The notes: generated by a model from the sequence alone, not told the origin. Numbered from the stretch's first letter, positions 954-63,045 are shown. The stretch is 64,000 nt of DNA from Octopus sinensis (GCF_006345805.1 NC_043002.1:24924001-24988000); one strand, 5' to 3'. Translations and numbers: made by a program.

Positions 954-1751
954 TTAGTTACATGACTTATTATGTCTAGTCACATGACATTTTCTTGAAA
1001 ATGACTTACCACAGTTTTCACAGTTAAAAGGTCTCTCTCCAGTATGAACCATTACATGGATGCTTAAATTATAATTGGAAGAAAATGCCTTATCACATAT
1101 TTCACACTGGAAAGGTTTCTCTCCTGTGTGAACAACATTGTGTCTTGTTACATGACATCTTCTTGAGAAGGCTTTACCACAAATTTCACAGTTAAATGGT
1201 TTTTCTCCCGTATGTACAGTCATATGTTTGTTTAAGTTATAATTAGATGAGAATGATTTACTACAAATTTCACACTGAAATGGACTGTCTCCAGAATGAA
1301 GCATTTTATGCATTTTGAAGTTACTACCAGACATAAATGATTTACCACAAATTTCACAATTAAATGGTCTTTCACCTGTGTGAACCATTACATGCTTTGT
1401 TAAGTTACTATTAGATGTACAGGTCTTGCCACAAATTTCACACTGATGGGGACTCATACCAGCATGAGTCATTATATGGTTCTTTAAGTTACTACTAAAT
1501 GAGAATGTCTTACCACAGATTTTACATTGGTATGGCCTTTCTCCTGTATGAACTGTTCTATGTCTCCTTAAGCTACTATTACAGGAGAAAGCTTTTCTAC
1601 AAATTCCACAGTGGTACGGCTTCTCTCCTGTATGAGTTCGTAAATGTTCACTTAATTGCCAACTTCTTTTGAACTGTTTATCACAGATTTCACAATGAAA
1701 TGATTTCTTTTCCCTCTGAACCATTTTGCTTTCCATCAGACTATGACACAT
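954..1751 (-). CDS. C2H2 zinc-finger protein, 9 tandem fingers (last is C2HC), no recognisable effector domain; likely start is the MESK ATG at 1736
   Basis: Intact ORF with repeated CxxC-x12-HxxxH and TGE(K/R)P linkers; leader homology to ZF gene 2 favours ATG 1736. Confidence 0.92.
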
Positions 1752-1907
1752 TCACACTAATTGACCACAGAATAGTATGGTATTCATTTTGTGTTTGAAA
1801 ATTGAGAAAATAAAATTTCATATCTTTTATAATGAATCAGCTGAAATCCTCTACATTGGTATTTTAACAAATACATTTCTATGATGTCATCTTTCATTAG
1901 CAATCCA

Positions 1908-1957
1908 CTAAGGTGAAAACATTTCCTGAAATACAACAAAAGTGAATATTAACATAG
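1908..1957 (-). promoter_or_regulatory. 3' splice acceptor (AG at 1927-1926) plus 4-codon uORF MFSP* of ZF gene 1
   Basis: minus strand tatgttaatattcacttttgttgtatttcag|gaaATGTTTTCACCTTAG; homologous to 38670-38716. Confidence 0.7.
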
Positions 1958-2050
1958 TATTAATAATGGGTGGGGTTTGTACAAAGTCACACACCAGTGG
2001 CAGTAACTATGTCATATTTAAGTGTGTTTGTTTGTGTGCATTTATGTGTA

Positions 2051-2062
<12 letters not shown>

Positions 2063-2103
<41 letters not shown>

Positions 2104-2213
2104 CATCATCATTTAACGTTCGCTTTCCATGCTGGCATGGGTTGGACGATTTGAATGAGGACTGACAAACCAGATGGCTGCACCAGACTCCAATCTGATC
2201 TGGCAGAGTTATA

Positions 2214-2259
<46 letters not shown>

Positions 2260-2325: not shown

Positions 2326-2825
2326 AAATAATAATGAAATTATTGTATGCAGTGCTCAGGTGCACCACAACTTGTCAGAAAGTGCATATAAAGTACATGC
2401 AGTAATGTAGAAATGTCTGGAAAGCGAACAATGTATGAGTCAGATACATGCTTGTGTGTGTATGGAGGGGAGAAAATCAAGTGTAGTGTTGGCGAATCTC
2501 AGGAAGCATGGAAGTTTTGAAGGATGCAGTGCTCCGACAACTAACAACCGATGCCAGCAGTTTGTTCCATGCTTCAGCAACTCTCAGCGTGAAAAAATGT
2601 TTCCTGAAGTCATGGGAGCTGTGCTGTTTTCTTACTTTGTAAATATGTCCACGGGTGTTAGATGGGTGGAGTTTGAAGAGGTGCTCAGAGTTATTGTTTG
2701 TGCGATGGTTGATAATCTTATGGGTGTCTGCCAAGTCAGCTGCCAGACGTCGGAGTTTCAATGTGTCCATGCCCAGGGAAGTAAGGCGTTCAGAATATGG
2801 CAAATGCCTGATGGAGGGTATTCTT
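2326..2825 (-). mobile_element. CR1-clade LINE 3' fragment
   Basis: HLPYSERLTSLGMDTLKLRRLAADL...TRGHIYKVRK...HFFTLRVAEAWNKL is a typical CR1 ORF2 C-terminus; same family as 29085-29836. Confidence 0.85.
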
Positions 2826-3260: not shown

Positions 3261-5081
3261 ATCATCATCATCATCGTTTAACATCTGCTTTCCATGCTGG
3301 CATGGGTTGGACGGTTTGACTGGGGACTGGTGAGCCAGATGGTTGCACCAGGATCCAATCTGATCTGGCAGAGTTTCTACAGGTGGATGCTCTTCCTAAT
3401 GGCAACTACTCTGAGAGTGTAGTGGGTGCTTTTACATGCCACCGGCACGAGGGCCAGTCAGGAGGTACTGGCAACGCTCAAAAGGGTGTTTTTACATGTC
3501 ATCTGCACAAGAGCCAGTCCAGCGGCACTGGCAACTCCCTCGCTCGAATGTTGTTTTTCACATATCACCGGCACAAGTGCCACTAAGGCGACACTGGTAA
3601 TGATCACGCTCAAATGGGGCTTATGTGTCACTGGCACGGGGACCAGTCAGCAGCCCTGGCAATGATCACACTCAAATGGTGCTCTTAGAGCTCCACTAGC
3701 ATGGATGCCAGACATGTGGTGCCGTCATCGAATTTGATTTCGAATTTACTTGCATCAACAGATCTTTGCAAGCAGAGTTTAGTGTCCAATGAAGGAAATG
3801 TATGCATAAGTGGGCTGGTTACACTGGTATCAGCCATGGGTTATGGTCCCACTTGCCTTGCCGGGCCTTCTCAAGCACAGCATATTTCCAAAGGTCTTGG
3901 TCACTAGTCATTGCCTCAGTGAGGCCTAATGTTCGAAGGTCATGCTTCACCACCTCATCCCGGGTCTTCCTGGGTCTAACTCTTCTACAGTTTCCCTCAA
4001 CTGCTAGGGTTTAACAGTTTTTCACACGTCTATCCTCATCCATTCGCACCACATGACCATACCAGCAGAGTCATCTCTCTTGCACATCACATCTGATGCT
4101 TCTTAGGTCAAACTTTTCTCTCAAGGCACTAACACTCTGTTAAGTATGCACACTGACATTATACATCCAGCGGAGTATACTGGCTTCATTCCTTGCAAGC
4201 TTACGCATATCCTCAGCAGTCACGGCCCATGTTTTACTGCCATATAGCATGGCTGCTCATACACATGCATCATACAGTCTACCTTTTACTCTGAGCAAGA
4301 GGCCCTTTGTCACCAGCAGAGGTAAGAGCTTTCCAAACTTCGCCCAGGTTATTCTTATTCTAGCAGCTACACCTTCAGAGCACCCGCCCCTGCTACTGAC
4401 TTGGTCACCTAGGTAACGGAGGCTATCAACTACTTCTAGTTTTTCTCTCTGGAATGTGGCAGAAGTTGTTCTTTGCACATTTTCAGTGTTTATTGCTACT
4501 GAGCATCTGCCACATACAAAAATTATCTTTCCAGTTAGCCTTCCTTTGATATTGCTGCACCTCTTATGTGTCCATAGCTTACACTGGATACATCTTATAG
4601 AGTTTCTACGTATGCCTTCTCTACAGATCAAGCAGGGCCATCTACTTGAAGAGATTTGTGCATTGTCTGTCTTCCTACTTATTAGGACTTTGGTTTTAGC
4701 TAGGTTGACTCTAAGGCCCTTCGATTCTAATCCTTGCTTCCACACCTGAAACTTCTCCTCTAGTTCTGATAGTGACTCTGCAATTAGAGCAAGTCATCAG
4801 CCTAGAGGAGCTCCCAGGGTCATCCTGTCTTGAATTCCTCTGTTATTGCCTGGAGGACTATGATAAATAGAAGGGGGCTGAGGACTGAATCTTGGTGGAC
4901 CCCTACCTCTACCCGGAATTCTTCACAGTACTCGTTGCCAACCCTCACCTTACTGACAGCATCCCTATACATGGCTTGCACAGCTCTCACTAACCATTCT
5001 TCTATCCCTAGTTTCCTCATTGACCACCAGATAAGGGATCGGGGAACCCTGTCAAAGGCTTTCTCCATGTCAACAAAAGCC

Positions 5082-16885: not shown

Positions 16886-17600
16886 ATGTTTCTGAATGTG
16901 GGAAATTGTTACAAATGTAGTATTTGTGGGAAAATGTTTACTACAAAATGTAACTTATCTGTTCATAGGTGCACTCATACATGGAGAAAGCCATACCACT
17001 GTGAAAAAATATGTAGGAAAACATTTTCTCAGTTTGGTAATTTAACAAGGCATAAACGTATTCACACTAAGGAAAAATAATACAAGTGTGATTATTGTAG
17101 GGAAAGCTGTTTCTAATATGAGTCATTTTCGAAGTGAGAAACCATACCACTGTGAAATATGTGGAAAATCATTTACTAAAAATGATCCTTTAACGGAACA
17201 CAAACGTACTCACATTGTGGAGAAATCAGATTACCATAAAATGTGTGAAACAGTTTTCAATTAAGGGGTATTGGGGTAAAATGACACCTGTGAAATTTGT
17301 TGAGGAATTTTTGTCACAATTCGGTCACTTATGTCCCTTCTGCTGGATAAAAATAATAGTTGTGATATTGTGGGAAATCATTTACTGATTGTAGTTATAT
17401 AACTACTCGTAAATGTAAATTTTATAATGAAGTTTCATTTGAAATATTGCCATTTATGTAAACATAAGTTTTTGTTACACAGAAATAAAACTAAACACTG
17501 TGACAATTGAATGTTAAAAATTCAAGTGTAAAAAATGACCTGTGGAATCTGTGGTAAATCAATTTCTGAGACTAATTACTTCTTAGGTAATGCAGATGTG
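16886..17600 (+). pseudogene. Decayed C2H2 zinc-finger paralogue (about 7-8 remnant fingers)
   Basis: [40 protein letters not shown] etc., broken by TAA at 17078-17080 and several frameshifts. Confidence 0.85.
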
Positions 17601-29084: not shown

Positions 29085-29801
29085 TAATTCATCGGCTTGG
29101 TAACTCAAGTTAGCTGTGGACCAGTGCCTCACCATGCACTTTGGGAGGAAACACCCAGCTTTTACATAATCCCCTCGCAACACCAATCTTAAGAAGTCTG
29201 TTAGTGAACGTGACCTGGGTATCATTGTAAACAACGATCTGCGTTGGACAAAGCACATCTCTAATATTGTCAAGAAGGCTGAGGGTGTCTTAGCATCACT
29301 CGGTAAGACCTTTGTCAGCTGCTCTCAGTTATCTATTTAAAGTTGTGTTTAACTATGGTACGTTCACACATTTTGCATCACGAGCGTGGAACCTTTATCT
29401 TGCTCATCATATCAATCGCCTGGAAACTGTTCAGAAACGTACAACTAAACGAATACCCGCCGCTTGGCATCTACCGTACTCTGAACGCTTTGCTTCCCTG
29501 AGCATGGACACATTAAAGCATCGTTATCTGGTCACTCTCTCAGCAGATACCCACAAGATTATCCACCATCTTTCCAACAACCTTATGTGCCTTTTTGAAT
29601 TCCATATGTCAGACACTCGTGGATTTGCTTACAAACTCAAAAAACAACACAACTTCTACGACTTTCGGAAACATTTTTTCACGCTCAGAATTAACCTTCA
29701 AAGCTTATGCTTCCTGAAATTCGCCAACAGTACACCTGATGCCTCCCCACTCTTTTTGTTTTTTAGTTGTAGTGCACCTGAGCACTGTATACGACAATTT
29801 T

Positions 29802-30420: not shown

Positions 30421-31720
30421 TTTTCATTGCCCACTAGGGGCCAACGTAGAGGGGACAACACAATCCGATTTTGAGGTCAGATACAAACAAATGGTATAAC
30501 ATTAAGGTGATATTAAAAATTCGATACAAAATGTAAATACGAATGATAAACACAACAAAAGACAAAACAGATGGAGTGATGGTTAAGCTCCTGATCCCAC
30601 GAGCCCCAATTCACCACTGATACCGGTGGTAGACCTTCATCATATTCACGTGGTTAGAGTCATGCACAACATTTGTACCACATACTTCCATCTATTATTA
30701 AACATTTTCTCTGACAGGCATCTTCTCTCCAGCCTCACTTTTCTTTTCAAATGAAAAGCGAAATATCTTTGTAGATCGAGACCAGAGATGAAGCCGTCTG
30801 TCATTACTCCTTTCATTCTCGTCTTCCATACCGTCTCTTTCGCGATTGCAACTACTAATGGAAGACAATTCTTACCTTCTTTCGTCAGGAAATCAGGTAG
30901 GTCCATTTTTAAAATTGACTCAGTGGATAGCTGTACTCTTCCTGTACCAGACAACAGATATTTCGCATAAGCTCGCACCTCCGACACCCCCGATTTTGAA
31001 CAATAGCATGCAGGACGGTTTCCCGTTCTTGTCCGCATCCTGGACAGATCGGTGTGTCGCCCCGACCGTGTCTTGCGAGCTTATCCCGAACGGGAAAGGC
31101 TCCTCGGTAACATTGTCAGGTTAAAGACTTTTGAAAATTATCCAGTGTCTTCGGCCCGAATGTACGTTGGAACAGACTGTCTAGTTGATTATCCTCGAGA
31201 CCCAGGGTTGCTCCCAAGGTATCGTCAGATTTAGATTCTACCAAACCACAATAGAAAAATGCGGTTGAACCACCGCTGCTGGCATTGTCCGAGCGATGGA
31301 ATAGCAGGAATGCCTTACGACTTTCCGAACGCTGTGTATCCAATATAGATCTTCGATAGCACCAGGTTTCCCGTGGTGCTAGTGAACGTGGGAAACATCC
31401 GTTTCATCAGCAGAAACCACACCCGTTTACCATCCAGGAGGAGCCAAAGATGCCTCAACGCCAATGCATGTCTTCGCATCGACAACCATGGCATCCCTAG
31501 TCCTCCTTTTAACGGCTTTTGACAGCAGATAGAACGTCTCACAAGTGGTTTCGAGCCCTTCCACAAAAAGCGAAAGAGCTGTCTTTCCAACTTGGTCAAC
31601 CACGAATCTGGGCAAGGCACGACAGTTAGGTGGTAAGTAATGACCGATGCGATGAACACATTGGCCACCTCCGCCCTCCCTTTCAGGGATAGCCACCGCC
31701 TAGACCAGGTCTTGGCTATG
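30421..31720 (-). mobile_element. Tx1-clade LINE, 3' part of ORF2 plus 3' UTR (frameshifted)
   Basis: KLERQLFRFLWKG..PLVRRSICCQKPLKGGLGMP; zf-RVT-like Cys region; AIAKETVWKTRMKG. Confidence 0.85.
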
Positions 31721-36650: not shown

Positions 36651-38278
36651 TATATACATATATATATACGATGGGCTTCTTTCGGTTTCCGTCTACCAAA
36701 TCCACTTACAAGACTTTGGTCAGCCTGAGGCTATAGTAGAAGACACTTGCCAAGGACTGAACCTGGAACCATGTAGTTCGTAAGCAAACTACTTACCACA
36801 CAGTCACTCCTCTGCCTATATGTCGTATTTTAAATTTGAAGAAAAAAACCCTTTTTCTTCAAGTATAAAATGCGACATTACTGGCATAATTTCATTATAT
36901 TTATAGTCCACAACACAAATGCATAAAAACAGGACAGGCACCACACACACAGACAAGAACAAGCACGTACACACAGAGGAACAAGCACGCACACACGTAC
37001 AACCCATTAGCTTTCTTCTCCTCCCCTTTCGTGAACTGACAGTTGACAACAGTCATGGAAAGAGCCGAACTGAAATGTTTTGGTCCATCGAGTTATATCG
37101 AAAGAATGCCAAATATGTTTATTAACATCGTAAGTTACACGCTTTTTACCATGTAGAAGTTAAATGAAATTTCAATAAGCTGACTGTCTCCATACAACTC
37201 ACGGTTTAGCAACTAATGCCGCTGAGAATGCGAATAAAAATGCAAAACATAGGGAGTGGAACGGAGAATACAGACTACAATTGTTTCATAACTAACTGAA
37301 ACAATTGTTGTTTGTATTCTACCTATTCCATTCCATGTTTTTTTAGATGGATGCATGCAGACAAACATATCAGTAGCATTTTAGGTCTCCGGGCAAGTCA
37401 ACGCAATGAGCCCTATTATATTTATTTATTGACAGCAAGCCACAACATACATAAATGAAAATTAGGTACCTAGATTTTTGAGGTCACCGAGTAACTGCCC
37501 GGTATGCCCAAACCTTTCGACAGCACTGTATATATATATATGTATACATTGATGTAAATATATATGTTTGTGCACGTGTACATAGAAACCTCTAACACAT
37601 ACACACAAAAAAAATAGGATAAGAACTCAATACAGGTTAACTGTAGAGTAAGAATTTGATTGAGTTAATTGAACAGTTCTTTGCTGAATGGTTTCATCCC
37701 AATAGGGAATCTTCAGAAGGAGATTTAACACTGGAAAGTGGGATATGTTAGTGTTCAGGGATGGCGAGTACATTTTCCTAATGGAGTAAGATACATAACA
37801 GAAATATTGAATTAGTGCAAAATACTTGATGGTACTTTATTCTGTCAACCTCCATCCGTAAAAAACAAGGGAGGTTATTAATCTCAGTGGAATTTGATCT
37901 CAGGACACAAAAGGACTTACTTAACTCATTTGCCACAAAGCATTTTGTCTGAAGCTCTAACGATTCTGTCAATCTCTGCAAGGAATGGCAGAATACCGAC
38001 CACTGCAGGTTTTCCAAAATTGGTGAGATTAATGTCCAGTTTTAACATCTGCAGGTAAAAAATGAGGGTAGCAGAACCTGCAATAGAATGAACGCCTATG
38101 AAAGTGTTAGATTTACCATGGATTTGGATATGTAGTCATGTTTTGGACACTTCAGTATATTTGTCTTATTTGTAAGGTTTGGTTTGCTGGTGTGACACAA
38201 TACACATAACAGGGGTGAGTAATCTCTAGGTTGCTCTCATACCATTTATTGGTACACTTATCTACAGATTTCATGCAC

Positions 38279-38485
38279 ATCATCATCGTTTAACGTCCGC
38301 TTTCCATGCTAGCATGGGTTGGACGATTTTGACTGAGGGCTGGCGAACCAGATGGCTGCACCAGGCTCCAATCTTGATTTGGCAGAGTTTCTACAGCTGG
38401 ATGCCCTTCCTAACGCCAACCACTCCGAGAGTGTAGTGGGTGCTTTTTACGTGCCACCGGCACGGGGGCCAGTCAGGCGGTACTG
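38279..38485 (-). mobile_element. Young RTE-X 3' tail copy in the intron of ZF gene 2
   Basis: catcatcgtttaacgtccgctttccatgctagcatgggttggacg. Confidence 0.85.
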
Positions 38486-38669: not shown

Positions 38670-38716
38670 ATGTTAATGTTGGTTTTCTTGTATTTCAGGA
38701 AATGTTTCCATCTTGA
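38670..38716 (+). promoter_or_regulatory. 3' splice acceptor (AG 38697-38698) plus 4-codon uORF MFPS* of ZF gene 2
   Basis: atgttaatgttggttttcttgtatttcag|gaaATGTTTCCATCTTGA; homologous to 1908-1957. Confidence 0.7.
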
Positions 38717-38889
38717 AAACTGTATTTCTAAATGAAGATGTTATTATTGAACTTTGTTAATTAAAATGAATACTTTGAGATTTTAAGAGCATAGAGAACT
38801 TATATCGTCAGATTAATATTTTGGGAACTACAAACTACTATCATATTGTCATTTAAAAAAATAGTATGATGTGAAAATATACCAGCAAG

Positions 38890-40404
38890 ATGGAAGACAA
38901 CACAGTTGATGCAGTAGAGACAAAATACCACTGTAAAATTTGTGATAAAAAGTTCTTATACATTTCACATTTCAGTATGCACAAACAGTCTCATACCAGA
39001 GAGAAACCATATCACTGCAATATATGTAGTAAAACATTTATATCTAATACTTATTTAAAGTCACATAAACTTGTTCATACTGTAGAGAAACCATACAAAT
39101 GTGATGTTTGTGGTAAAACTTTCAAAAGAAATCCTAACTTAAAGAAACATAAAATTATTCACACAGGAAAGAAACCATTCCGCTGTGAAATTTGTGGTAA
39201 ATTTTTCTCAACTAATGCTGTATTAAAGCAACATATAGTGCTTCATACAGGAGAAAAATTATACAAATGTGATTTTTGTGATAAAGAATTTGCAAGAAGA
39301 AATGACCTAACAAAGCACAAGATGATTCATACTGGACAGAAACCATTTCACTGTGAAATTTGTGGTAAAACTTTTTTCAATGATTGTTACTTAAAGAAGC
39401 ATAGAATTATTCACACAGGAGAAAGCCCATATCATTGTGACATCTGTGGTAAAATATTTGCTTACAAAAGTATCTTAAAGGACCATCAGCTTGTTCATAC
39501 TGTTGAGAAAGCGTACACTTGTAACGTTTGCGGTAAAGCTTTTAACAGAACTTCTCACTTAAAGAGACATAAAATGATTCATACAGGGGAGAAACCATTC
39601 CACTGTGAAATTTGTGGAAAAACTTTCTCAACAAACAGTGAATTAAAACAACACATGTTTGTTCATACTGGAGATAAAATTTACAAATGTGAAATTTGTG
39701 ACAAAGCATTTTCAAGAAAAACTGGCTTAACTAAGCATGAAATGGTTCACACAGGCGTGAAACCCTTCTACTGTAATTTTTGTGGTAAAAGCTTCTGGAA
39801 TAATGCTGACTTAATAAAGCATAAGATACTCCATACAGGAGTGACTTACGCTTCCAAAGCACACAGCTGTAATATTTGTGGTAAAGTATTTGCTTGTGGT
39901 CGAAATTTAAAGAGGCATAAAGTCCTTCATACAGGAGAAAAACTTTACTCCTGCAAAACCTGTGGCAAATCATTTTCATGTAGTGATTACTTAAAGTGCC
40001 ATGAACTGGTCCATACTGGTGAAAAACCACACATTTGTGATATATGTGGAAAAACATTTTCATTAAAATCTAATAAAGAAAGGCATAAAAAAGTTCACAC
40101 TGGAGACAAACCATACCACTGTGACATTTGTGATAAAACTTTCTCAGAACGTTCTAATTTGAAAAGCCATAAATTAGTTCATTCAGGAGAGAGACCCTGC
40201 TACTGTGAGGTTTGTGGTAAAACTTATTTGTGTGTTAGAGAGTTAAAGAAACATTATGTAATTCATACAAATGACAAAACACACAAATGTGAAATCTGTG
40301 GTAAAACATTTTGGTATAAAAGTAACTTAAATCAACATTACATTGTTCACACAGGAAAGAAATCACTATCGACATCATCATCATCACTATCATCTCTGAC
40401 TTAA
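38890..40404 (+). CDS. C2H2 zinc-finger protein, 17 tandem fingers, no recognisable effector domain
   Basis: Intact 504-aa ORF; 17 CxxC-x12-HxxxH units; one extended linker TGVTYASKA between fingers 11 and 12. Confidence 0.93.
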   Translation: MEDNTVDAVETKYHCKICDKKFLYISHFSMHKQSHTREKPYHCNICSKTFISNTYLKSHKLVHTVEKPYKCDVCGKTFKRNPNLKKHKIIHTGKKPFRCEICGKFFSTNAVLKQHIVLHTGEKLYKCDFCDKEFARRNDLTKHKMIHTGQKPFHCEICGKTFFNDCYLKKHRIIHTGESPYHCDICGKIFAYKSILKDHQLVHTVEKAYTCNVCGKAFNRTSHLKRHKMIHTGEKPFHCEICGKTFSTNSELKQHMFVHTGDKIYKCEICDKAFSRKTGLTKHEMVHTGVKPFYCNFCGKSFWNNADLIKHKILHTGVTYASKAHSCNICGKVFACGRNLKRHKVLHTGEKLYSCKTCGKSFSCSDYLKCHELVHTGEKPHICDICGKTFSLKSNKERHKKVHTGDKPYHCDICDKTFSERSNLKSHKLVHSGERPCYCEVCGKTYLCVRELKKHYVIHTNDKTHKCEICGKTFWYKSNLNQHYIVHTGKKSLSTSSSSLSSLT

Positions 40405-40929: not shown

Positions 40930-41428
40930 ATGCAGGTGGCACGTAAAAAGCACCCACTACACTCACAGTGGTTGGCGTTAGGAAGGGCATCTAGCTGTAG
41001 AAACATTGCCAGATAAGACTGGAGCCTGGTGCAGCCTTCTGGCTTCCCAGATCCCCGGTCGAACCGTCCAACCCATGCTAGCATGGAGAACGGACGTTAA
41101 ACGATGATGATGATGATGCTACAGTTGATGTCCTAGTTCTCTGTTAAGCTATTTGTGACCAGCATTGCCTTACTGGCACCTGTGCCGTTGGCATGTGTAA
41201 AAAAATTCGAGTGAGGTTGTTGCCAGTACTGCCTGACTGGCCCCCATGCCGGTGGCACGTAAAAGCACCCACTACACTCTCGGAGTGGTTGGCGTTAGGA
41301 AGGGCATCCAGCTGTTGAAACTCTGCCAGATCAAGACTGGAGCCTGATGCAGCCATCTGGTTCGCCAGCCCACAGTCAAAACCGTCCAACCCATGCTAGC
41401 ATGGAAAGCAGACGTTAAACGACGACGA
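40930..41428 (+). mobile_element. Two tandem RTE-X 3' tail copies (40930-41118; 41157-41428)
   Basis: gtggcacgtaaaa...ggaagggcatc...catgctagcatgga...gttaaacgatgatg. Confidence 0.85.
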
Positions 41429-45324: not shown

Positions 45325-48028
45325 ATTCTATGTTTGACTTTTGCTTTATATTTGTACAAGTTGGCTTCAAGTCTCACCCAGAGACCTCAAGAGACAACAG
45401 ATTGGAAGTTCGTGATGTTGTTATGCTTAGTGTGCCATATATTTGGTTTTGTATTTAGTGTTGTACTAGTGAATGTCAAAAAAAAAAAAAGCGATAAGTA
45501 TGTTTGTTTTAAAACTTGAGATTACATAGAAAGTATTTTGCGTAGGATATGAGCAGTTCCCATGAGCACTATCTTTTGAATTTCTGCCATTTTGGGGTTT
45601 CCTGGTATCTGAGTTAGGTAGCGATCAGCCCCTTTTGCTATCATTCCCAGGGCACATATGACAACAGGTATTGTTTTAGTCTTCAGGTTCCACATTTTGC
45701 TGATTTCTATTTCAAGATCTTTATATTTGCTCAGTTTTTGGTAGGTCTTGACAGATACGTTTATATCGATTGGGACAGTCATATCAATGAGGAGGCATGT
45801 TCTTTGTTTGAAGTCTTTCAATATGATGTCTGGCCTATTTGCATCTATCTGTCTGTCAGTTTGAATGGGGAAGTTCCAGAGGAGTGAGATGTGGTCATTT
45901 GTGTTCCCACCAGTTTTTTTTCATGGGGCAAATCCAGGTTTTTGCAGATTACCCAGTGAATATATTGTGCAGCTCTATCATGCCTGTTGAGATACTCTGT
46001 AGGCATTAGAAGACTGCACTTGGAGACAACATGATCAATGGTTTCATTTTGTTGTTGACATACACGACATGTTGGGCTACTGCTATTCTTTAATATGTTG
46101 GCCTGGTAGTTTCTTGTTGGTAGGCATTGATCTTGAGCTGCTATGAGAAACCCTTCTGTTTCAGATTTTAAGCCAGAGGCCATTAGCCATTGATGGGTCA
46201 GGGCTTTGTCAACATCTGCATTATTCACTCTCTTTGGTATTTGTCATAGAGAGGTTTTTCTTGTCATTTATCATTCAGAATATCTAAGGCAGCAGTTTTA
46301 GCACGGGTTTTCATGCGTTTAGCTTTTTCTGTGCTTGTTTCTTGTATGTCTAATTCCGAAATTTGTTGTATTCGGAATTTACTTTGAATGCCTATTTCCA
46401 CTCCTAGACTGATCATACATGTTTCTCTATCTATCTAACTATTTTATCTGATTTCTATCTATTTTGTCTGATTTGTTCATTTCTCCTCTCGTCTATGATC
46501 GACCTTCGTGTATGCCATCTTGAAACCTGTTTCCTTTTAATACACTTCCGCCTTCTCCAAAAATCCCTCTTCCGGACAACTTTTTACTTAAAAGGCAACC
46601 CACAACATGTGCTCTCTCTCTCTCATTCATCTACCAGCTATATAATCCCATGCACAGATAAGTTTGAATGCCTATTTCCACTCCTAGACTGATCATACAT
46701 GTTTCTCTATCTATCTAACTATTTTATCTGATTTCTATCTATTTTGTCTGATTTGTTCATTTCTCCTCTCGTCTATGATCGACCTTCGTGTATCGCGGTG
46801 CACCCGCCCTGCCCACCACCACCACCACCAATACCGGATATCTCTATTTTGCTCCATCTATACCGGATGTCGCTTCTCCCACCACCATTATAGGTGTCTA
46901 CTCTTCGAACCCCCCTCTTCAATACGCTATCTCACCATGCATTACCCCTCTCTTGATATCCTATGTTCTACTTGCCTACAACCTGTCATCATTTCTCTGA
47001 ACCACCCCTCCCCACTGGTGCTCCCCTATATTCCTGCACCACCCCCCACATAAAAAGCACCATCCGAACGTGGCCGATGCCAGACCCCTCTGGCACCTGT
47101 GCAGGTGGCACGTAAAAAGCACCCACTACACTCGCGGAGTGGTTGGCGTTAGGAAGGGCATCCAGCTGTAGAAACACTGCCAGACCAGACTGGAGCCTGG
47201 GGCAGTCCCTAGCTCCCCAGACCCCGGTCGAAACCGTCCAACCCGTGCTAGCGCGGAAAACGGACGTTAAACGATGATGATGATGATGATTCCTTTGCCT
47301 GTTTGTTACTGAGTATGATGCTTTCTTGTTTTCATGTTTTGAGACAAGTTTTAACATCCAGTCCTCAGAGTTTTTCAGGTAGGTGTCTAGGCCAATTGTA
47401 GCAATCTTCATTGTTATTGCCAGTTGTAAAAGTCCATGGCCTCCCTCTTTTCTTGGCAGATAAAGTCGTTCTATATCTGCATTAGGGTGGTGCATTCTAT
47501 GCATTGTCAACAGTTTTCTTATTTTTCTGTCGAGCTGACATATTTCAGTAATTGACCAGTTAACGATATTGAAACTGTAAGTCACGACTGGTATGGCTAA
47601 TGCATTGATCGCTTCGATCCTGTTTCTTGCATTCAGCTCTGTCTTGAGTATTGCTCTCACTCTTCGATAGCATTCTCTCCTGATCCTTTCCTTCATCTCT
47701 GAATGCCTTATTCCGTCCCCTTCAATTACCCCTAGGTACTTGTATCTCTCCGCTGGGTCTAATTCTTTTATGACATTTTGCTGGTCAAGGTTCACGTTAG
47801 ATGTTTCTGTCATTTTTCCTTTGATAAAGGTAGCTTTTGCACATTTATCGAAGCCAAATTGCATTCTGATGTCATCACTGAATTGTTTAACAATCACTAG
47901 TAAGCCCTTAAGTTGATGGTCATTTTTTGCAAAGAGCTTTAAATCATCCATGTAAATGAGATGATTTATATTTTTATCAAACATTTTATATCCGTACTGT
48001 GCGGTCATTGAGCAATTTTGAGAGAGGT
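45325..48028 (-). mobile_element. 5'-truncated R4/Dong-clade non-LTR retrotransposon (RT C-terminus, CCHC finger, RLE endonuclease) with ~900-bp internal insertion at ~46390-47290
   Basis: HLIYMDDLKLFA, YKYLG, RLYLPRKEGGHGL, ETEGFLIAAQDQ, CRVC...ETIDHVVSKC, RHD, RPDII..., LIDMTVP, KLSKYKDL; (TAA)n on both sides. Confidence 0.9.
46386..46790. repeat. ~127-bp direct repeat pair (46386-46512; 46665-46791)
   Basis: tttgaatgcctatttccactcctagactgatc...gaccttcgtgtat occurs twice, apparently identical. Confidence 0.85.
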
Positions 48029-48050
48029 AATTATTATTATTATTATTATT

Positions 48051-48082
<32 letters not shown>

Positions 48083-48084
48083 TA

Positions 48085-49467
<1,383 letters not shown>

Positions 49468-50190
49468 TAGGCGGTGAGCTGGCAGAATCGTTAGCATGCC
49501 GGGAAAAATGTTTAGAGATATTTCGCCCGCCGCTGAGTTCAAATTCCACCGAGGTTGATAAATTAAGCACCAATGAAACACTGGGGTCAATGTAACCGAT
49601 TAGTCCCCTCCCCCAGAATTTCAGGCTTTGTACTTATAGTAGAAATTATTATTATTAGGCGGTGAGCTGGCAGAAATGTTAGCACGCTGGGTGGAATGCT
49701 TTGCGGTATTTCGTCTGTTATGTTCTGAGTTCAAATTCTGCTGAGGTCGACTTTGCCTTTCATCCTTTCATGGTTGATTAAATAAGTACCAGTTATGCAT
49801 TGGGGTCGATATAATCGACTTAATCCATTTGTCTGTCCTTGTTTGTCCTCTCTGTGTTTAGCCCCTTGTGGTAGGTATTTCGTCTGTCTTTACATTCTGA
49901 GTTCAAATTCCACCGAGATCGACTTTACCTTCCAACCATTTGGGATCCATAAATTAAGTACCAGTGAAACACTTGGGTCGATATAATCGACTAGTCCCTT
50001 CCCCACCAAATTTCAAACCTTGTGCCCTTCATAGAAAGGATTATTATTATCATTATGGCGCTGAACTGGCAGACTCTTTAGCGAACTGGCAGAATCTTTA
50101 CGTTCTGAGTTTAATTCCGCCGAGGTCGATTTGGCCTTTTGTTCTTTCGATGTCGATAAAATAAGTAGTCAAGAACTGGGGTCGACACAA
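49468..50190 (+). mobile_element. Head-to-tail array of four SINE A units
   Basis: Heads ggcggtgagctggcagaa at ~49468 and 49657 and ggcgctgaactggcaga at ~50056, each preceded by (ATT)n; one internal dimer junction. Confidence 0.85.
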
Positions 50191-52136: not shown

Positions 52137-53161
52137 TTATTGAAGCCTATTATGAACATTACTGTTGTTTCTCAGTTTGGAAACTGATTTATATATACCC
52201 TGCAGACATGGTACTGCTGCTTCTGGTCTATTATCATGATCACATACCGCCACAAGGAATGGGTTTTTCCAATATGACTTCAAAATGGAACCAAAATATT
52301 TGGATGCTTGAACTCGATGGTTTTGGCAATTTTGTTTGATGCCTAACTTTTCTGACAATACACCATTCCAAACATCATCTGGCATGAGCATTTTGTTCTT
52401 CAACGATGCCAGATAGAGTTTGTTGATTACATTAATATGTGCTATGTAACCAACACCATGACAATATATAGGATAGTTCTCCCCTTGATACAACATTTTC
52501 TCACCGAGTTTACGGAATTTTTTTAGTTTGTTATGCATTAATTCTCTTCCACCAAAACAATAACAAAATGCAAATTTATTATCATAATCAGCTTGAGACA
52601 GATCATAGTGAAGAAATGGCAGAAGTTTGATCTGGTCAACAAAAAGTTCATCGTTTAATACCATAACATATTCCACATTGGCACAAAACTCCACACTCCA
52701 CTTCCATGCCATAAGTGTCTTTAAGTAGACATTACCATAAGATTCTGGGAAATCATCCTGGATAATATCTCTGTATATTCTACTCTCCTCACGGATGAGC
52801 GATTCAGTTGTATAATTATTTGTATTGGCGAAAAGAAAAACATGTTTGACAACAATGTCTTTTGAGAAAGAATCATATGGAATATCCTGGAAAATTTTTC
52901 TTAGTACTTTTCGTCGATCCAAATGGCTGTAAATTGTACGAACAGTATAAAGAAGGAATACTTTTTCATATTGACTGCAAAGAACTGGTTCATTGATGAG
53001 ATTTTTAAAGTCATATTCATATGGCTGCGGGTTGTCATAGTAACGTTTATCAACTTTTGATCCTTTTGGTTGTGATTGAAGAATGATCTCTGTATTTTTT
53101 AAGGTTTCTCTTCTTTCATTAAAATAAGTCAAAGAATGATCCTTTGGTGAATGAAAAGCAT
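52137..53161 (-). CDS. GT31-family beta-1,3-galactosyltransferase-like protein, main (luminal) exon; catalytic motifs substituted
   Basis: RRKVLR, VFLF, DIIQDDFPESYGNVYLKTLMAWKW..FC, YPIYCHGVGY, DDVWNG..LGI; acceptor tttacttttgctttccag at 53163-53162; the track's first M (53228) is GTG. Confidence 0.85.
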
Positions 53162-53510
53162 CTGGAAAGCAAAAGTAAAGTATATACATTAAGAATTGTT
53201 GAAAATTTCGTCTAGCCACATGATTCACAAAGCAATTTCAAATTCAAAGCTTGTAGTGTTTTACTGGTATTCAGTTGTAGCAAAACCTAAAATCGAAACC
53301 ATACATGTCTAGTAAGATATGCCCTGAATACCAACCAATCAGCTTGTTGTTACCGAGTGTAGAGGGGTTATAAAAGAGAAAGCATGCCAGAATCAGTGCA
53401 GAAGTTTGAGAAGATTTCAGAGATTTATGAATATAGGATTTTTGGTCACTGTTCGACCTTTGTTTTCAACGCACTTTTCTAAGCATATACCATGAACACA
53501 ATATCCTCAC

Positions 53511-61770: not shown

Positions 61771-61959
61771 ATTCTGCTGTAACAGCAGAAAAGAAGTGGT
61801 CTCGGTAAATTTTCATAATCTTAAGCACAAAAACAATCTTTCACAGTGGAGCAAAGAGCAATACGACCGAAAAACAATTCCAGTATGTGGCAAAGCAACG
61901 GGTAGGGAGAGAGAGAGAGGTGAAAACTTCGTTGTAGACTATCTGACACTTACTGTCTG

Positions 61960-63045
61960 TCTGTCTGCCTCTCTCTTTAGGCTAAAAATGCGCAGACATG
62001 CACTCAGGCTTAGGCACCTCTGGCTTTACCTGAACGGTGAGCAGGTGTGGTCTCCGTTCGTCAAGCTGTTATTGCCACAGTTCACATCGTTTACCAAACT
62101 GAACCCATGGATCAAGTGTAGACCGAGGTTGGGCGTGTGGCATGTAGAGTGCCATCAGGCACTTGTGCTTCTCTCCCAGTCGGGCAACGCCGGTGGCGGG
62201 GGTACTACCTCGTTCTTCTATAGAGGGTTAGTAGAGTTTAAGTGTGACGACGTCCTGGGAGAAACCCTAGGCTTCGACGAAGATCAACTGGCCAGCCTGT
62301 TCCAGAGAACATTCGGTCCGGGGCCTATGGATAATTACCAAAAGTCCCTGGCCTGGCAATGTTACAGAGGAGCTTTACCGGTTCGAGATAAGCTCTTTAG
62401 ACATGGGTGTGCACCTTCGTCGGTTTGTGCAAGATGTGAGAGGGACAGTGAAACTCCTGCACGCGATTGTGCAATGCCCCAAGGTGACTGAACTCTGGGC
62501 TTATGTTGAACACCTGCTGTCGCATTCGAGAAGAGTACAACTGTCGAGCGAATCTGTAATTAAGATTGTTCCGCCCACCTCCCCGAATAGGGAGGATTGA
62601 GCCAGTTTTCTCTCGGTAGTTGCTATGGCGAAAGAAGTAGTATGGAAGACGAGAGTGAAAGGAATTGCAACAGTCATGTTTATCTCCAGTCTCGAGCTAA
62701 TCGACTTTTTCGTTTTCCACATGAAACGGAAAATAAGGCCTGAGAAGATATACCTGTCGCAAAGTGTGTTTCGTAAAAGATGGAAGTATATAGCGAGTAT
62801 GTTGCGAGTGAAAGAACCTGTTTAATCGAGAACGTAAAAAAAGGAGAAAGCAAAGTCTTCCGTGTGAGTATGTGGTTTGTGGGGTCAACCGCGTCCTCTG
62901 CTTCATTTTTTGTTAACCACTCATTCTCATTTAATTGTATATATTTTAATTGTTTATTCATACATTTCGTCTCATTCGATACCCTGACCCCAACGTTTGT
63001 TTTGTCTGTCCCGGTATTGTCCCTTCTTTTTAGGCATGTGTTTGT
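61960..63045 (+). mobile_element. Tx1-clade LINE 3' fragment
   Basis: MRRHALRLRHLW, SLAWQCYRGALPVRDKL, CARC, ET..HAIVQCP, AMAKEVVWKTRVKG; homologous to 30421-31720. Confidence 0.85.

What the first reader, a model, noticed from the sequence alone, without database searches (positions are those of the whole stretch)
38670..38892. ZF genes 37 kb apart share a splice acceptor, a 4-codon uORF and a ~190-nt leader
Seen: ZF1 (minus, exon starts 1925) reads tatgttaatatt...tgtatttcag|gaaATGTTTTCACCTTAG; ZF2 (exon starts 38699) reads catgttaatgtt...tgtatttcag|gaaATGTTTCCATCTTGA. Both have a uORF at +4 (MFSP*/MFPS*) with the stop in the same position, and ATGGAA 189 vs 191 nt after the acceptor, although the finger arrays have diverged strongly. 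In the phase-1 frame both read KCFHL with two synonymous differences, followed by LMKDDIIEMYLLK vs (shifted) LNEDVIIELC*LK. Inference: a conserved cassette, either translational control by a uORF or the end/relic of an upstream-exon ORF (an unrecognised effector module analogous in layout to KRAB exons).
Basis: partly seen in the sequence, partly recalled or inferred. Interest (0 to 1): 0.72.

Follow-up and report, generated by a model that had tools for sequence, protein, structure and literature searches.

The report
Shared splice acceptor of two octopus zinc-finger genes
Two diverged zinc-finger gene copies in the Octopus sinensis genome keep the same roughly 50-base splice-acceptor signal and start of a non-coding leader in front of their finger exon, which is what old gene duplicates usually show and gives no evidence of a hidden protein module.

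Summary
The window is Octopus sinensis CM016864.1:24924001-24988000. Two head-to-head C2H2 zinc-finger genes share an exact 20-mer, TTGTATTTCAG|GAAATGTTT: ZF1 (954-1751, minus strand, 8-9 fingers) and ZF2 (38890-40404, plus strand, 17 fingers). The proteins are 46% identical.

Both genes have a 4-codon uORF at +4 and a homologous ATGGAA start at +190 (ZF1) or +192 (ZF2). The conserved part is only about -30 to +20 around the AG: a TTAAT branch-point motif, a pyrimidine tract, CAG|G, and the first 17 exon bases. Bases +21 to +80 are 55-65% identical. The middle of the leader cannot be aligned.

All three reading frames are closed between the acceptor and the main ATG in both genes. The indels are not multiples of three. 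The frame-1 peptide (KCFHL...) has no homologue among 1.84 billion representative proteins and no Pfam match, so the "relic effector exon" reading is unsupported. The uORF is one of 6-8 upstream ATGs, and its peptide is not conserved.

Best reading: a conserved 3' splice site of a 5'-UTR intron, followed by a uORF-rich non-coding leader inherited by duplication. No other octopus loci or transcripts could be reached, so neither splicing nor family-wide conservation is tested.

The parts
38670..38680 (+). ZF2 branch-point-like motif ATGTTAATGTT. The candidate branch A is at 38676, 22 nt before the G of the AG.
   Evidence: Sequence read. It matches yUnAy and aligns with ZF1 1955-1945.
38681..38698 (+). 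ZF2 polypyrimidine tract and acceptor ...TTTTCTTGTATTTCAG, with no other AG between the branch point and the AG.
   Evidence: It is one of only 9 sites on both strands of the window that pass a strict 3' splice-site definition.
38699..38889 (+). ZF2 leader, 191 nt. It is non-coding: stops occur in all three frames, and it holds 6 upstream ATGs.
   Evidence: No Rfam family. Folding z-score -1.5.
38702..38716 (+). ZF2 first uORF, ATG TTT CCA TCT TGA (MFPS*).
38890..40404 (+). ZF2 coding sequence: 504 aa, 17 C2H2 fingers. The start ATGGAA sits in the context aagATGg.
   Evidence: It is the product on record for this locus in GCA_006345805.1.
1945..1955 (-). ZF1 branch-point-like motif ATGTTAATATT. 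The candidate branch A is at 1949, 23 nt before the G of the AG.
1926..1944 (-). ZF1 polypyrimidine tract and acceptor ...CACTTTTGTTGTATTTCAG.
1737..1925 (-). ZF1 leader, 189 nt up to the homologous ATGGAA. Stops occur in all three frames. It holds 8 upstream ATGs, counting the in-frame ATG at 1751.
   Evidence: Folding z-score +1.2.
1908..1922 (-). ZF1 first uORF, ATG TTT TCA CCT TAG (MFSP*).
954..1751 (-). ZF1 coding sequence: 265 aa from ATG 1751. The start homologous to ZF2's is ATGGAA at 1736. It has 8 C2H2 fingers plus one C2HC-like finger.

Best explanation
ZF1 and ZF2 are old DNA-level duplicates, now head to head and 36.8 kb apart, of an Octopus sinensis C2H2 poly-zinc-finger gene. 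The whole coding sequence of each lies in one exon.

The conserved core of about 50 nt is the 3' splice site of an intron in the 5' untranslated region. It consists of a TTAAT branch point 22-23 nt upstream of the AG, a pyrimidine tract, CAG|G, and the first 17 or so bases of the exon.

After splicing, the finger exon contributes a non-coding, AT-rich leader of about 190 nt that carries 6-8 short upstream ORFs. The finger protein starts at the homologous ATGGAA, 12 residues before the first finger. Ribosomes would reach that start by leaky scanning or reinitiation, so the leader should dampen translation.

**Shown here:**
- The acceptor block is homologous in the two genes and has a local excess of conservation.
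- The site has textbook acceptor anatomy.
- All reading frames in the leader are closed.
- The main start codon is homologous in the two genes.

**Inferred:**
- The AG is actually used for splicing.
- An upstream non-coding exon exists.
- The upstream ORFs lower translation.
For: **Identity of the locus.**
- The window maps to GCA_006345805.1, record CM016864.1. A paper names that assembly as O. sinensis.
- The products on record are exactly the single-exon ORFs of 504 and 265 aa.
- Pfam finds only C2H2 families in both proteins. The proteins are 46% identical and collinear from Met1.

**The shared block.**
- The exact 19-mer occurs only at the two sites; 0.06 matches are expected by chance.
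- The local alignment is 85% identical over 46 nt.
- The conservation peak sits at -20..+20. Permutation gives p=0.006 to 0.03.

**Acceptor anatomy.**
- Both sites pass a strict 3' splice-site definition that only 9 positions in 128 kb of sequence (both strands) satisfy.

**The leader is non-coding.**
- All frames are closed, and there are 6-8 upstream ATGs.
- The leader matches no RNA family and has no unusual folding.

**The duplication was at the DNA level.**
- The nearest SINE copies upstream of the two genes lie in opposite orientation relative to the gene, so they are independent insertions. Homology between the two genes fades about 70 nt upstream of the AG.
Against: - No transcript evidence could be reached, so use of the AG and the existence of an upstream exon are not shown.
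- No homologous upstream exon turned up between the two 5' flanks. The only hit was a LINE fragment.
- The strict splice-site definition was written after the sites had been seen.
- Splice signals are usually conserved in composition rather than letter for letter. A perfect 20-mer between copies whose proteins are 46% identical hints at some extra constraint, or at an old gene-conversion patch.
- A leader with 6-8 upstream ATGs is a poor template for scanning ribosomes. The real 5' end of the mRNA may therefore lie elsewhere.
Confidence: 0.6

Rival explanations
1. The exon-side conservation exists because the minimal uORF (AUG at +4, four codons) is a selected translational control element. 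It captures scanning ribosomes just after the exon junction and sets how many reinitiate at the finger ORF. This does not exclude a real splice site.
For: - The ATG, its gaaATGt context and the stop position are the same in both genes.
- The stop codon differs (TAG versus TGA) but stays in place.
- The first 17 exon bases are 82% identical, against 55-65% further into the leader.
- In ZF2 the uORF bases UUCCAUCUUG are perfectly complementary to CAAGAUGGAA at the main start, and the minimum-energy fold pairs them.
Against: - There are only two sequences.
- The peptide is not kept (SP versus PS).
- The next in-frame stops lie 7 and 5 codons further on, so the uORF would stay short without any selection.
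- Five to seven further upstream ATGs follow, several in good context.
- The complementarity to the main start falls to about 6 bp in ZF1 and is not in its predicted fold.
- Neither leader folds better than shuffled sequence (z = -1.5 and +1.2).
Confidence: 0.15
2. The leader is the decayed end of a once-coding N-terminal region. An upstream exon encoded an effector module that read through this acceptor, in frame 1 (KCFHL...), into the finger array, as in KRAB or FiNZ zinc-finger genes.
For: - Both differences within KCFHL are synonymous in frame 1.
- After a 4-nt shift, LMKDDIIEMYLLK aligns with LNEDVIIELC*LK at 7 of 13 residues.
- Frame 1 stays open for 46 codons in ZF1.
- Mismatches over +1..+62 lean towards the third position of frame 1.
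Against: - All three frames are closed before the fingers in both genes, and frame 1 is not the finger frame.
- The indels are not multiples of three.
- An open run of 46 codons arises in about 4% of shuffled leaders, and in 11% of frames window-wide.
- The periodicity is not significant (p=0.13, 0.34 and 0.57 for three segment lengths).
- The peptide has no hit at E<=0.001 in 1.84 billion representatives and no Pfam family.
- The most relevant paper found on cephalopod C2H2 genes contains none of the words exon, intron, UTR or N-terminal.
Confidence: 0.08
3. The conserved block is a DNA-level element, such as a core promoter or a transcription-factor site, and not a splice site. The genes would then be single-exon, with transcription starting at about the TCAG.
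For: - By eye, TCAG resembles an initiator and TTAAT(A/G)TT is a weak TATA-like box upstream of it.
- ATTTCAGGAAAT is a near-palindrome that contains TTCnnGAA and GGAA cores.
- Weak similarity continues to about -70, for example TTGTACA.
- No upstream exon could be identified.
Against: - The TATA-like motif starts only about 24-27 nt upstream of the candidate start, closer than the canonical 30-31.
- In ZF2 the motif reads TTAATGTT.
- A pyrimidine tract, an AG-free zone and CAG|G together fit an acceptor better.
- The motif readings were made by eye and were not tested against any matrix.
Confidence: 0.1
4. There is no special constraint. The identical run is either a chance slow patch in two homologous sequences or the trace of an old short gene-conversion tract between the inverted copies.
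For: - The permutation p-values are only 0.006 to 0.03, and the region was picked out by eye.
- With n=2, selection cannot be separated from history.
Against: - The patch coincides exactly with a functional-looking acceptor and lies at the same distance from the homologous start codon in both genes.
- Identity decays gradually on both sides; it is not a sharp-edged, near-100% conversion block.
Confidence: 0.07

Closest known systems
Vertebrate KRAB zinc-finger genes and cyprinid FiNZ zinc-finger genes (the FiNZ layout is described in Genome Res 2023, PMC10547256)
   Same: - Lineage-specific, duplicated poly-C2H2 genes.
- All fingers lie in one large 3' exon that is preceded by an intron.
- Paralogues share their exon-intron layout.
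   Different: - In those families the upstream exons encode an effector (KRAB, or the 28-aa FiNZ domain) that is spliced in frame to the finger exon.
- Here every frame is closed between the acceptor and the fingers.
- The proteins on record start 12 residues before finger 1, and no extra domain is detectable.
uORF-rich 5' leaders that dampen translation through leaky scanning or reinitiation, such as yeast GCN4 and mammalian ATF4 (general knowledge, not tested here)
   Same: - Several short upstream ORFs precede a main ORF that sits in good context.
- The first uORF is very short, a type that generally allows reinitiation.
   Different: - No evidence of regulated reinitiation, and no conserved spacing or overlap logic between the two copies.
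- Only the first uORF is positionally conserved.
- The peptide is not conserved.
Ordinary conservation of splice sites and UTR ends between paralogues after tandem or inverted segmental duplication
   Same: - Homology is confined to the transcribed unit plus about 70 nt of intron.
- Identity is highest at the functional signal and decays in the flanks.
- Transposon insertions are independent in the two copies.
   Different: Nothing essential. The only mild oddity is a letter-perfect 20-mer between copies whose proteins are 46% identical.

Membership tests
C2H2 poly-zinc-finger gene | Tandem CX2CX12HX3H fingers joined by TGEKP-type linkers | tested here: met
   Pfam zf-C2H2 and zf-H2C2_2 match with E values from 1e-49 to 1e-113. 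A regular expression counts 8 fingers in ZF1 and 17 in ZF2, spaced 28 aa apart.
Canonical U2-type 3' splice site | yUnAy branch point 18-40 nt upstream of the AG | tested here: met
   TTAAT has its branch A 22 nt (ZF2) or 23 nt (ZF1) before the G of the AG.
Canonical U2-type 3' splice site | Polypyrimidine tract, an AG-free zone, and YAG|G | tested here: met
   At least 12 of the 16 bases before CAG|G are pyrimidines, and there is no AG in the last 14 nt. Only 9 such sites occur in 128 kb, and these are two of them. The definition was written after the sites had been seen.
Canonical U2-type 3' splice site | Spliced transcripts that join an upstream donor to this AG | not testable with these tools
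   No octopus transcript data could be reached. Exact-product look-ups returned only the genome record.
Regulatory uORF | The AUG and the stop are kept at the same position in homologues | tested here: met
   ATG at +4 and a stop at codon 5 in both copies. This rests on n=2 only.
Regulatory uORF | Evidence of selection on the uORF itself: a conserved peptide, or uORF length that depends on the conserved stop | tested here: not met
   The peptides are MFSP and MFPS. The next in-frame stops lie only 7 and 5 codons further on. Five to seven further upstream ATGs lie in the same leader.
Regulatory uORF | Ribosome initiation at the uORF and an effect on main-ORF output | not testable with these tools
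   This needs Ribo-seq or a reporter assay.
KRAB- or FiNZ-type zinc-finger gene layout (effector exon spliced in frame to the finger exon) | A reading frame open from the acceptor into the finger array | tested here: not met
   Stops occur in all three frames of both leaders.
KRAB- or FiNZ-type zinc-finger gene layout (effector exon spliced in frame to the finger exon) | A recognisable or recurrent N-terminal module | tested here: not met
   The frame-1 peptide has no hit at E<=0.001 in 1.84 billion representatives and no Pfam family. The proteins contain only finger domains. Caveat: very few octopus proteins turned up in the word-index protein searches, so the protein collections may under-represent octopus.
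KRAB- or FiNZ-type zinc-finger gene layout (effector exon spliced in frame to the finger exon) | An upstream coding exon | not testable with these tools
   The two 5' flanks share no unique homologous segment, but a short diverged exon would be missed.

The most novel reading that the evidence does not exclude
The core of about 50 nt (TTAAT branch point, TTGTATTTCAG|GAAATGTTT, and a minimal uORF) may be a signature shared by a whole octopus-specific zinc-finger subfamily rather than by this pair alone. It would then act as a common post-transcriptional switch. One form of that switch is a junction-proximal uORF that can pair with the main AUG context, as it does in ZF2. Another reading is that it marks the fossil of a lost N-terminal effector frame.
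Probability: 0.1. Interest if true: 0.55.

Novelty: new member of a known kind. Interest (0 to 1): 0.2.

Why it matters
As it stands, this matters little. It documents that two octopus zinc-finger paralogues have a single coding exon preceded by a conserved acceptor and a non-coding leader rich in upstream ORFs.

That is useful for gene-model curation. The homologous start of ZF1 is probably ATGGAA at 1736, not the upstream in-frame ATG at 1751.

It is also mild evidence that these cephalopod finger genes lack a KRAB-like N-terminal module. The most relevant paper found on cephalopod C2H2 genes does not discuss gene structure at all.

If the block were conserved across hundreds of octopus zinc-finger genes, it would give a handle on their coordinated regulation.

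Tried and rejected
1. **Whole-ZF1 protein search.** It was swamped by zinc-finger proteins from all animals. No octopus hit appeared and hit lengths were capped near 1.75 times the query, so the search was wasted.
2. **ZF2 N-terminal 119-aa search.** It produced only 18 candidates. The single O. bimaculoides protein was 45% identical and has no contig on record, so no paralogue or orthologue DNA could be fetched.
3. **Exact look-ups.** These covered cluster membership of ZF1 and ZF2, alternative ZF1 starts, the ZF3 ORF and the galactosyltransferase ORF. Nothing beyond the genome record was found.
4. **Metagenome scans.** The 27-mer gave 0 hits. The acceptor-plus-gap-plus-GATGGAA pattern gave 5 bacterial chance hits without fingers.
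5. **Search for a shared upstream exon by inverted homology between the two 5' flanks.** It found only a LINE fragment (2337-2823 versus 29451-29800).
6. **GC and CpG scan for a promoter island.** The GC-rich patches are repeats or overlap transposon-like ORFs, for example 31.0-31.9 kb and 61.8-62.4 kb.
7. **Rfam search and folding of both leaders.** No family matched, and the z-scores are -1.5 and +1.2.
8. **Codon-position periodicity as a proxy for dN/dS per frame.** It is not significant and has no power at this divergence: the real coding start gives p=0.26.
9. **ZF3 (16886-17264) as a third copy of the cassette.** A multiple alignment shows scattered matches. In a scan of the whole window, however, its site does not score above background.
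10. **Reading the palindrome ATTTCAGGAAAT as a heat-shock, STAT or ETS site.** The half-site spacing does not fit the canonical forms. This was done by eye only and dropped.

Full report
**Where we are.**
Exact look-ups of the two finger proteins place the window at NCBI GCA_006345805.1, record CM016864.1, bases 24924001-24988000. A paper names that assembly as Octopus sinensis. The window is 37% G+C and is littered with SINE and LINE fragments and microsatellites.

**The two genes.**
- ZF1 is the ORF at 954-1751 on the minus strand: 265 aa, with 8 C2H2 fingers plus a C2HC-like ninth.
- ZF2 is the ORF at 38890-40404 on the plus strand: 504 aa, with 17 fingers.
- These are exactly the products on record for the loci. 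Pfam sees only C2H2 families in them.
- The genes lie head to head. The proteins are 46% identical and collinear from the first methionine, and the distance from that methionine to the first finger cysteine is the same in both.

**Checking the observation.**
- The quoted strings are in the sequence at the quoted places.
- The 19-mer TGTATTTCAGGAAATGTTT occurs exactly twice in 64 kb, once in front of each gene on the gene's own strand. Dinucleotide shuffles give 0.06 matches even with three mismatches allowed.
- BLASTN aligns 1955-1910 with 38670-38714 at 85% over 46 nt.
- Both genes have ATG at +4 of the putative exon, followed by three codons and a stop (MFSP*, MFPS*). Both have ATGGAA at +190 (ZF1) or +192 (ZF2).

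**How much is really shared.**
Ungapped diagonals give the following picture.

| Region (relative to exon start) | Identity | Offset |
|---|---|---|
| -40..-21 | 60% | 1 nt |
| -20..-1 | 80% | none |
| +1..+20 | 70% | none |
| +21..+80 | 55-65% | 4 nt |
| about +81..+160 | no detectable diagonal | n/a |
| +161 into the coding sequence | 50-60% | 2 nt |

- The first 45 codons are 63% identical: 69%, 67% and 53% by codon position.
- The conserved object is therefore a core of about 50 nt around the AG, not a 190-nt leader. That core is better kept than the start of the coding sequence.
- Permuting the columns of a 393-column alignment (61% matches) gives p=0.006 for the 20-nt run, p=0.015 for 39/46 and p=0.03 for 27/30. 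This is a real but modest local excess, and it comes from a single pair of sequences.

**Anatomy of the core.**
- The intron side reads ATGTTAAT(A/G)TT, then a tract of at least 12 pyrimidines in 16, then CAG|G.
- TTAAT fits the yUnAy branch-point consensus. Its A lies 22-23 nt before the G of the AG, and no other AG intervenes.
- I wrote a strict definition of such a site after seeing these two. Only 9 positions on both strands of the window satisfy it, and two of them are these sites.
- This is what a functional U2-type 3' splice site looks like. Both sites lie at the same distance from a homologous start codon.

**Is the leader coding?**
- It is not coding. All three frames carry stops between the acceptor and the main ATG in both genes, so no upstream exon can be read through into the fingers.
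- The alignable blocks are offset by 4 nt and then 2 nt, so no frame has been preserved since the duplication.
- The one long open stretch is frame 1 of ZF1 (KCFHL...SNTK, 46 codons). About 4% of shuffled leaders have such a stretch in some frame, and 11% of all frames in the window do.
- That peptide has no match at E<=0.001 among 1.84 billion representative proteins scored exhaustively with HMMER, and no Pfam family.
They are statistically empty, though. The codon-position distribution of mismatches gives p=0.13, 0.34 and 0.57 for three segment lengths, and the same test cannot even recognise the true coding start at this divergence (p=0.26).
- I therefore reject the "relic effector module" reading as unsupported. 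It is not disproved. Very few octopus proteins turned up in the word-index protein searches, so octopus may be thinly represented in the protein collections, and a short, diverged module would escape detection.

**The uORF.**
- The ATG at +4, its context and the position of the stop are shared, and the stop codon itself differs (TAG versus TGA).
- Against a special role:
  - The peptide is not kept.
  - The next in-frame stops are 7 and 5 codons away, so the uORF would stay short whatever happened.
  - ZF1 has seven and ZF2 five further upstream ATGs, several with a purine at -3.
- The fair description is a uORF-rich leader whose first uORF happens to lie inside the conserved acceptor-proximal block.
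- One curiosity: in ZF2 the uORF bases UUCCAUCUUG (38706-38715) are perfectly complementary to CAAGAUGGAA around the main start (38886-38895), and the minimum-energy fold pairs them. In ZF1 only about 6 bp of this survive, and the predicted fold does not use them. Neither leader folds better than shuffles (z = -1.5 and +1.2), and no Rfam family matches.

**Most likely mechanism.**
- The two genes descend from a DNA-level duplication of a unit that ran from about 70 nt upstream of the acceptor to the end of the finger ORF. The nearest SINE copies upstream of the two genes lie in opposite orientations relative to the gene, so they are later insertions.
- The conserved core is the acceptor of a 5'-UTR intron.
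- The exon then supplies a non-coding leader that should reduce translation of the finger ORF. That ORF starts at ATGGAA, in the context aagATGg in ZF2 and ctgATGg in ZF1.
- I put this at 0.6. The rivals are:
  - selection on the uORF itself (0.15, not exclusive of the splice-site reading);
  - a core promoter or factor site misread as an acceptor (0.10);
  - a decayed coding N-terminus (0.08);
  - chance or an old conversion tract (0.07).

**What could not be done.**
- The decisive tests are junction reads at the two AGs and a census of the motif in front of other octopus finger genes. Both need octopus transcriptomes or genomes, and the available collections do not expose these.
- Protein searches returned almost no octopus entries.
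- The one O. bimaculoides hit has no contig on record.
- Exact look-ups found only the genome record.
- Metagenome scans gave nothing or bacterial chance hits.
- No shared upstream exon emerged from comparing the two 5' flanks, and GC/CpG peaks coincide with transposon-like sequence.
- The literature I could search describes the cephalopod C2H2 expansions but not their gene structure. An iScience 2025 paper on these genes contains none of the words exon, intron, UTR or N-terminal. The FiNZ and KRAB layouts used for comparison are from Genome Res 2023.

**Verdict.**
The feature is real and ordinary. Two paralogous zinc-finger genes retain a homologous 3' splice site and the beginning of a non-coding, uORF-rich leader. 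The effector-module idea is unsupported, and the uORF idea is open but weak. Interest is 0.2. The novelty call is "new member of a known kind".

Noticed in passing
window 16886-17264 (+): A third, degenerate zinc-finger locus (ZF3) lies between the two genes. An acceptor-like site, ttcattacag|aaagaATGTTTC, is followed directly by an ORF MFLNVGNCYKCSICGK... that runs into fingers but stops after 64 aa; further finger remnants are broken by stops. Here ATGTTT right after the AG is the start of the finger ORF, not of a uORF. Its similarity to the ZF1/ZF2 cassette is not above background, and no product is on record.
   Followed up: partly
window 38706-38715 and 38886-38895 (+): In ZF2 only, 10 nt of the first uORF (TTCCATCTTG) are the perfect reverse complement of the main start context (CAAGATGGAA), and the predicted fold pairs them. 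In ZF1 the matching pairing is about 6 bp and is not in the predicted fold.
   Followed up: partly
window 2096-2210, 3261-3475, 38273-38485, 40931-41117, 41219-41422: Multiple copies of a SINE-like repeat of about 200 nt, 83-89% identical, lie on both sides of both finger genes. The nearest copies upstream of the two acceptors are in opposite orientation relative to the gene, so they are independent insertions.
   Followed up: partly
window 52137-53228 (-): A 363-codon ORF has a Pfam Galactosyl_T domain (PF01762, E=2.5e-28). It is probably a beta-1,3-galactosyltransferase-type gene or exon. No product with exactly this sequence is on record, so the annotated start or structure probably differs.
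   Followed up: partly
window 2337-2823 (-) and 29451-29800 (+); 46989-48218 (-); 30646-31038 (-); 61796-62491 (+): Retrotransposon remnants. Two diverged copies of a LINE 3' end (73-89% identical) are the only non-SINE homology between the two 5' flanks. There is a weak RVT_1 match at 46989-48218. GC-rich, CpG-richer patches at 31.0-31.9 kb and 61.8-62.4 kb overlap ORFs that look transposon-derived by eye.
   Followed up: partly
window 1751 versus 1736 (-): The ZF1 product on record starts at ATG 1751 (MCHSLMESK...). The start homologous to ZF2's is ATGGAA at 1736. ATG 1751 directly abuts the stop of an upstream ORF (gtgTGAATGtgt).
   Followed up: yes
window 2030-2110, 2215-2250 (-) and 49221-49595 (+): Long (AT)n and (AC)n microsatellites lie just upstream of the ZF1 acceptor region. 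A long simple repeat near 49.2-49.6 kb reads as poly-Leu, then Ile and Tyr runs, in one frame.
   Followed up: no
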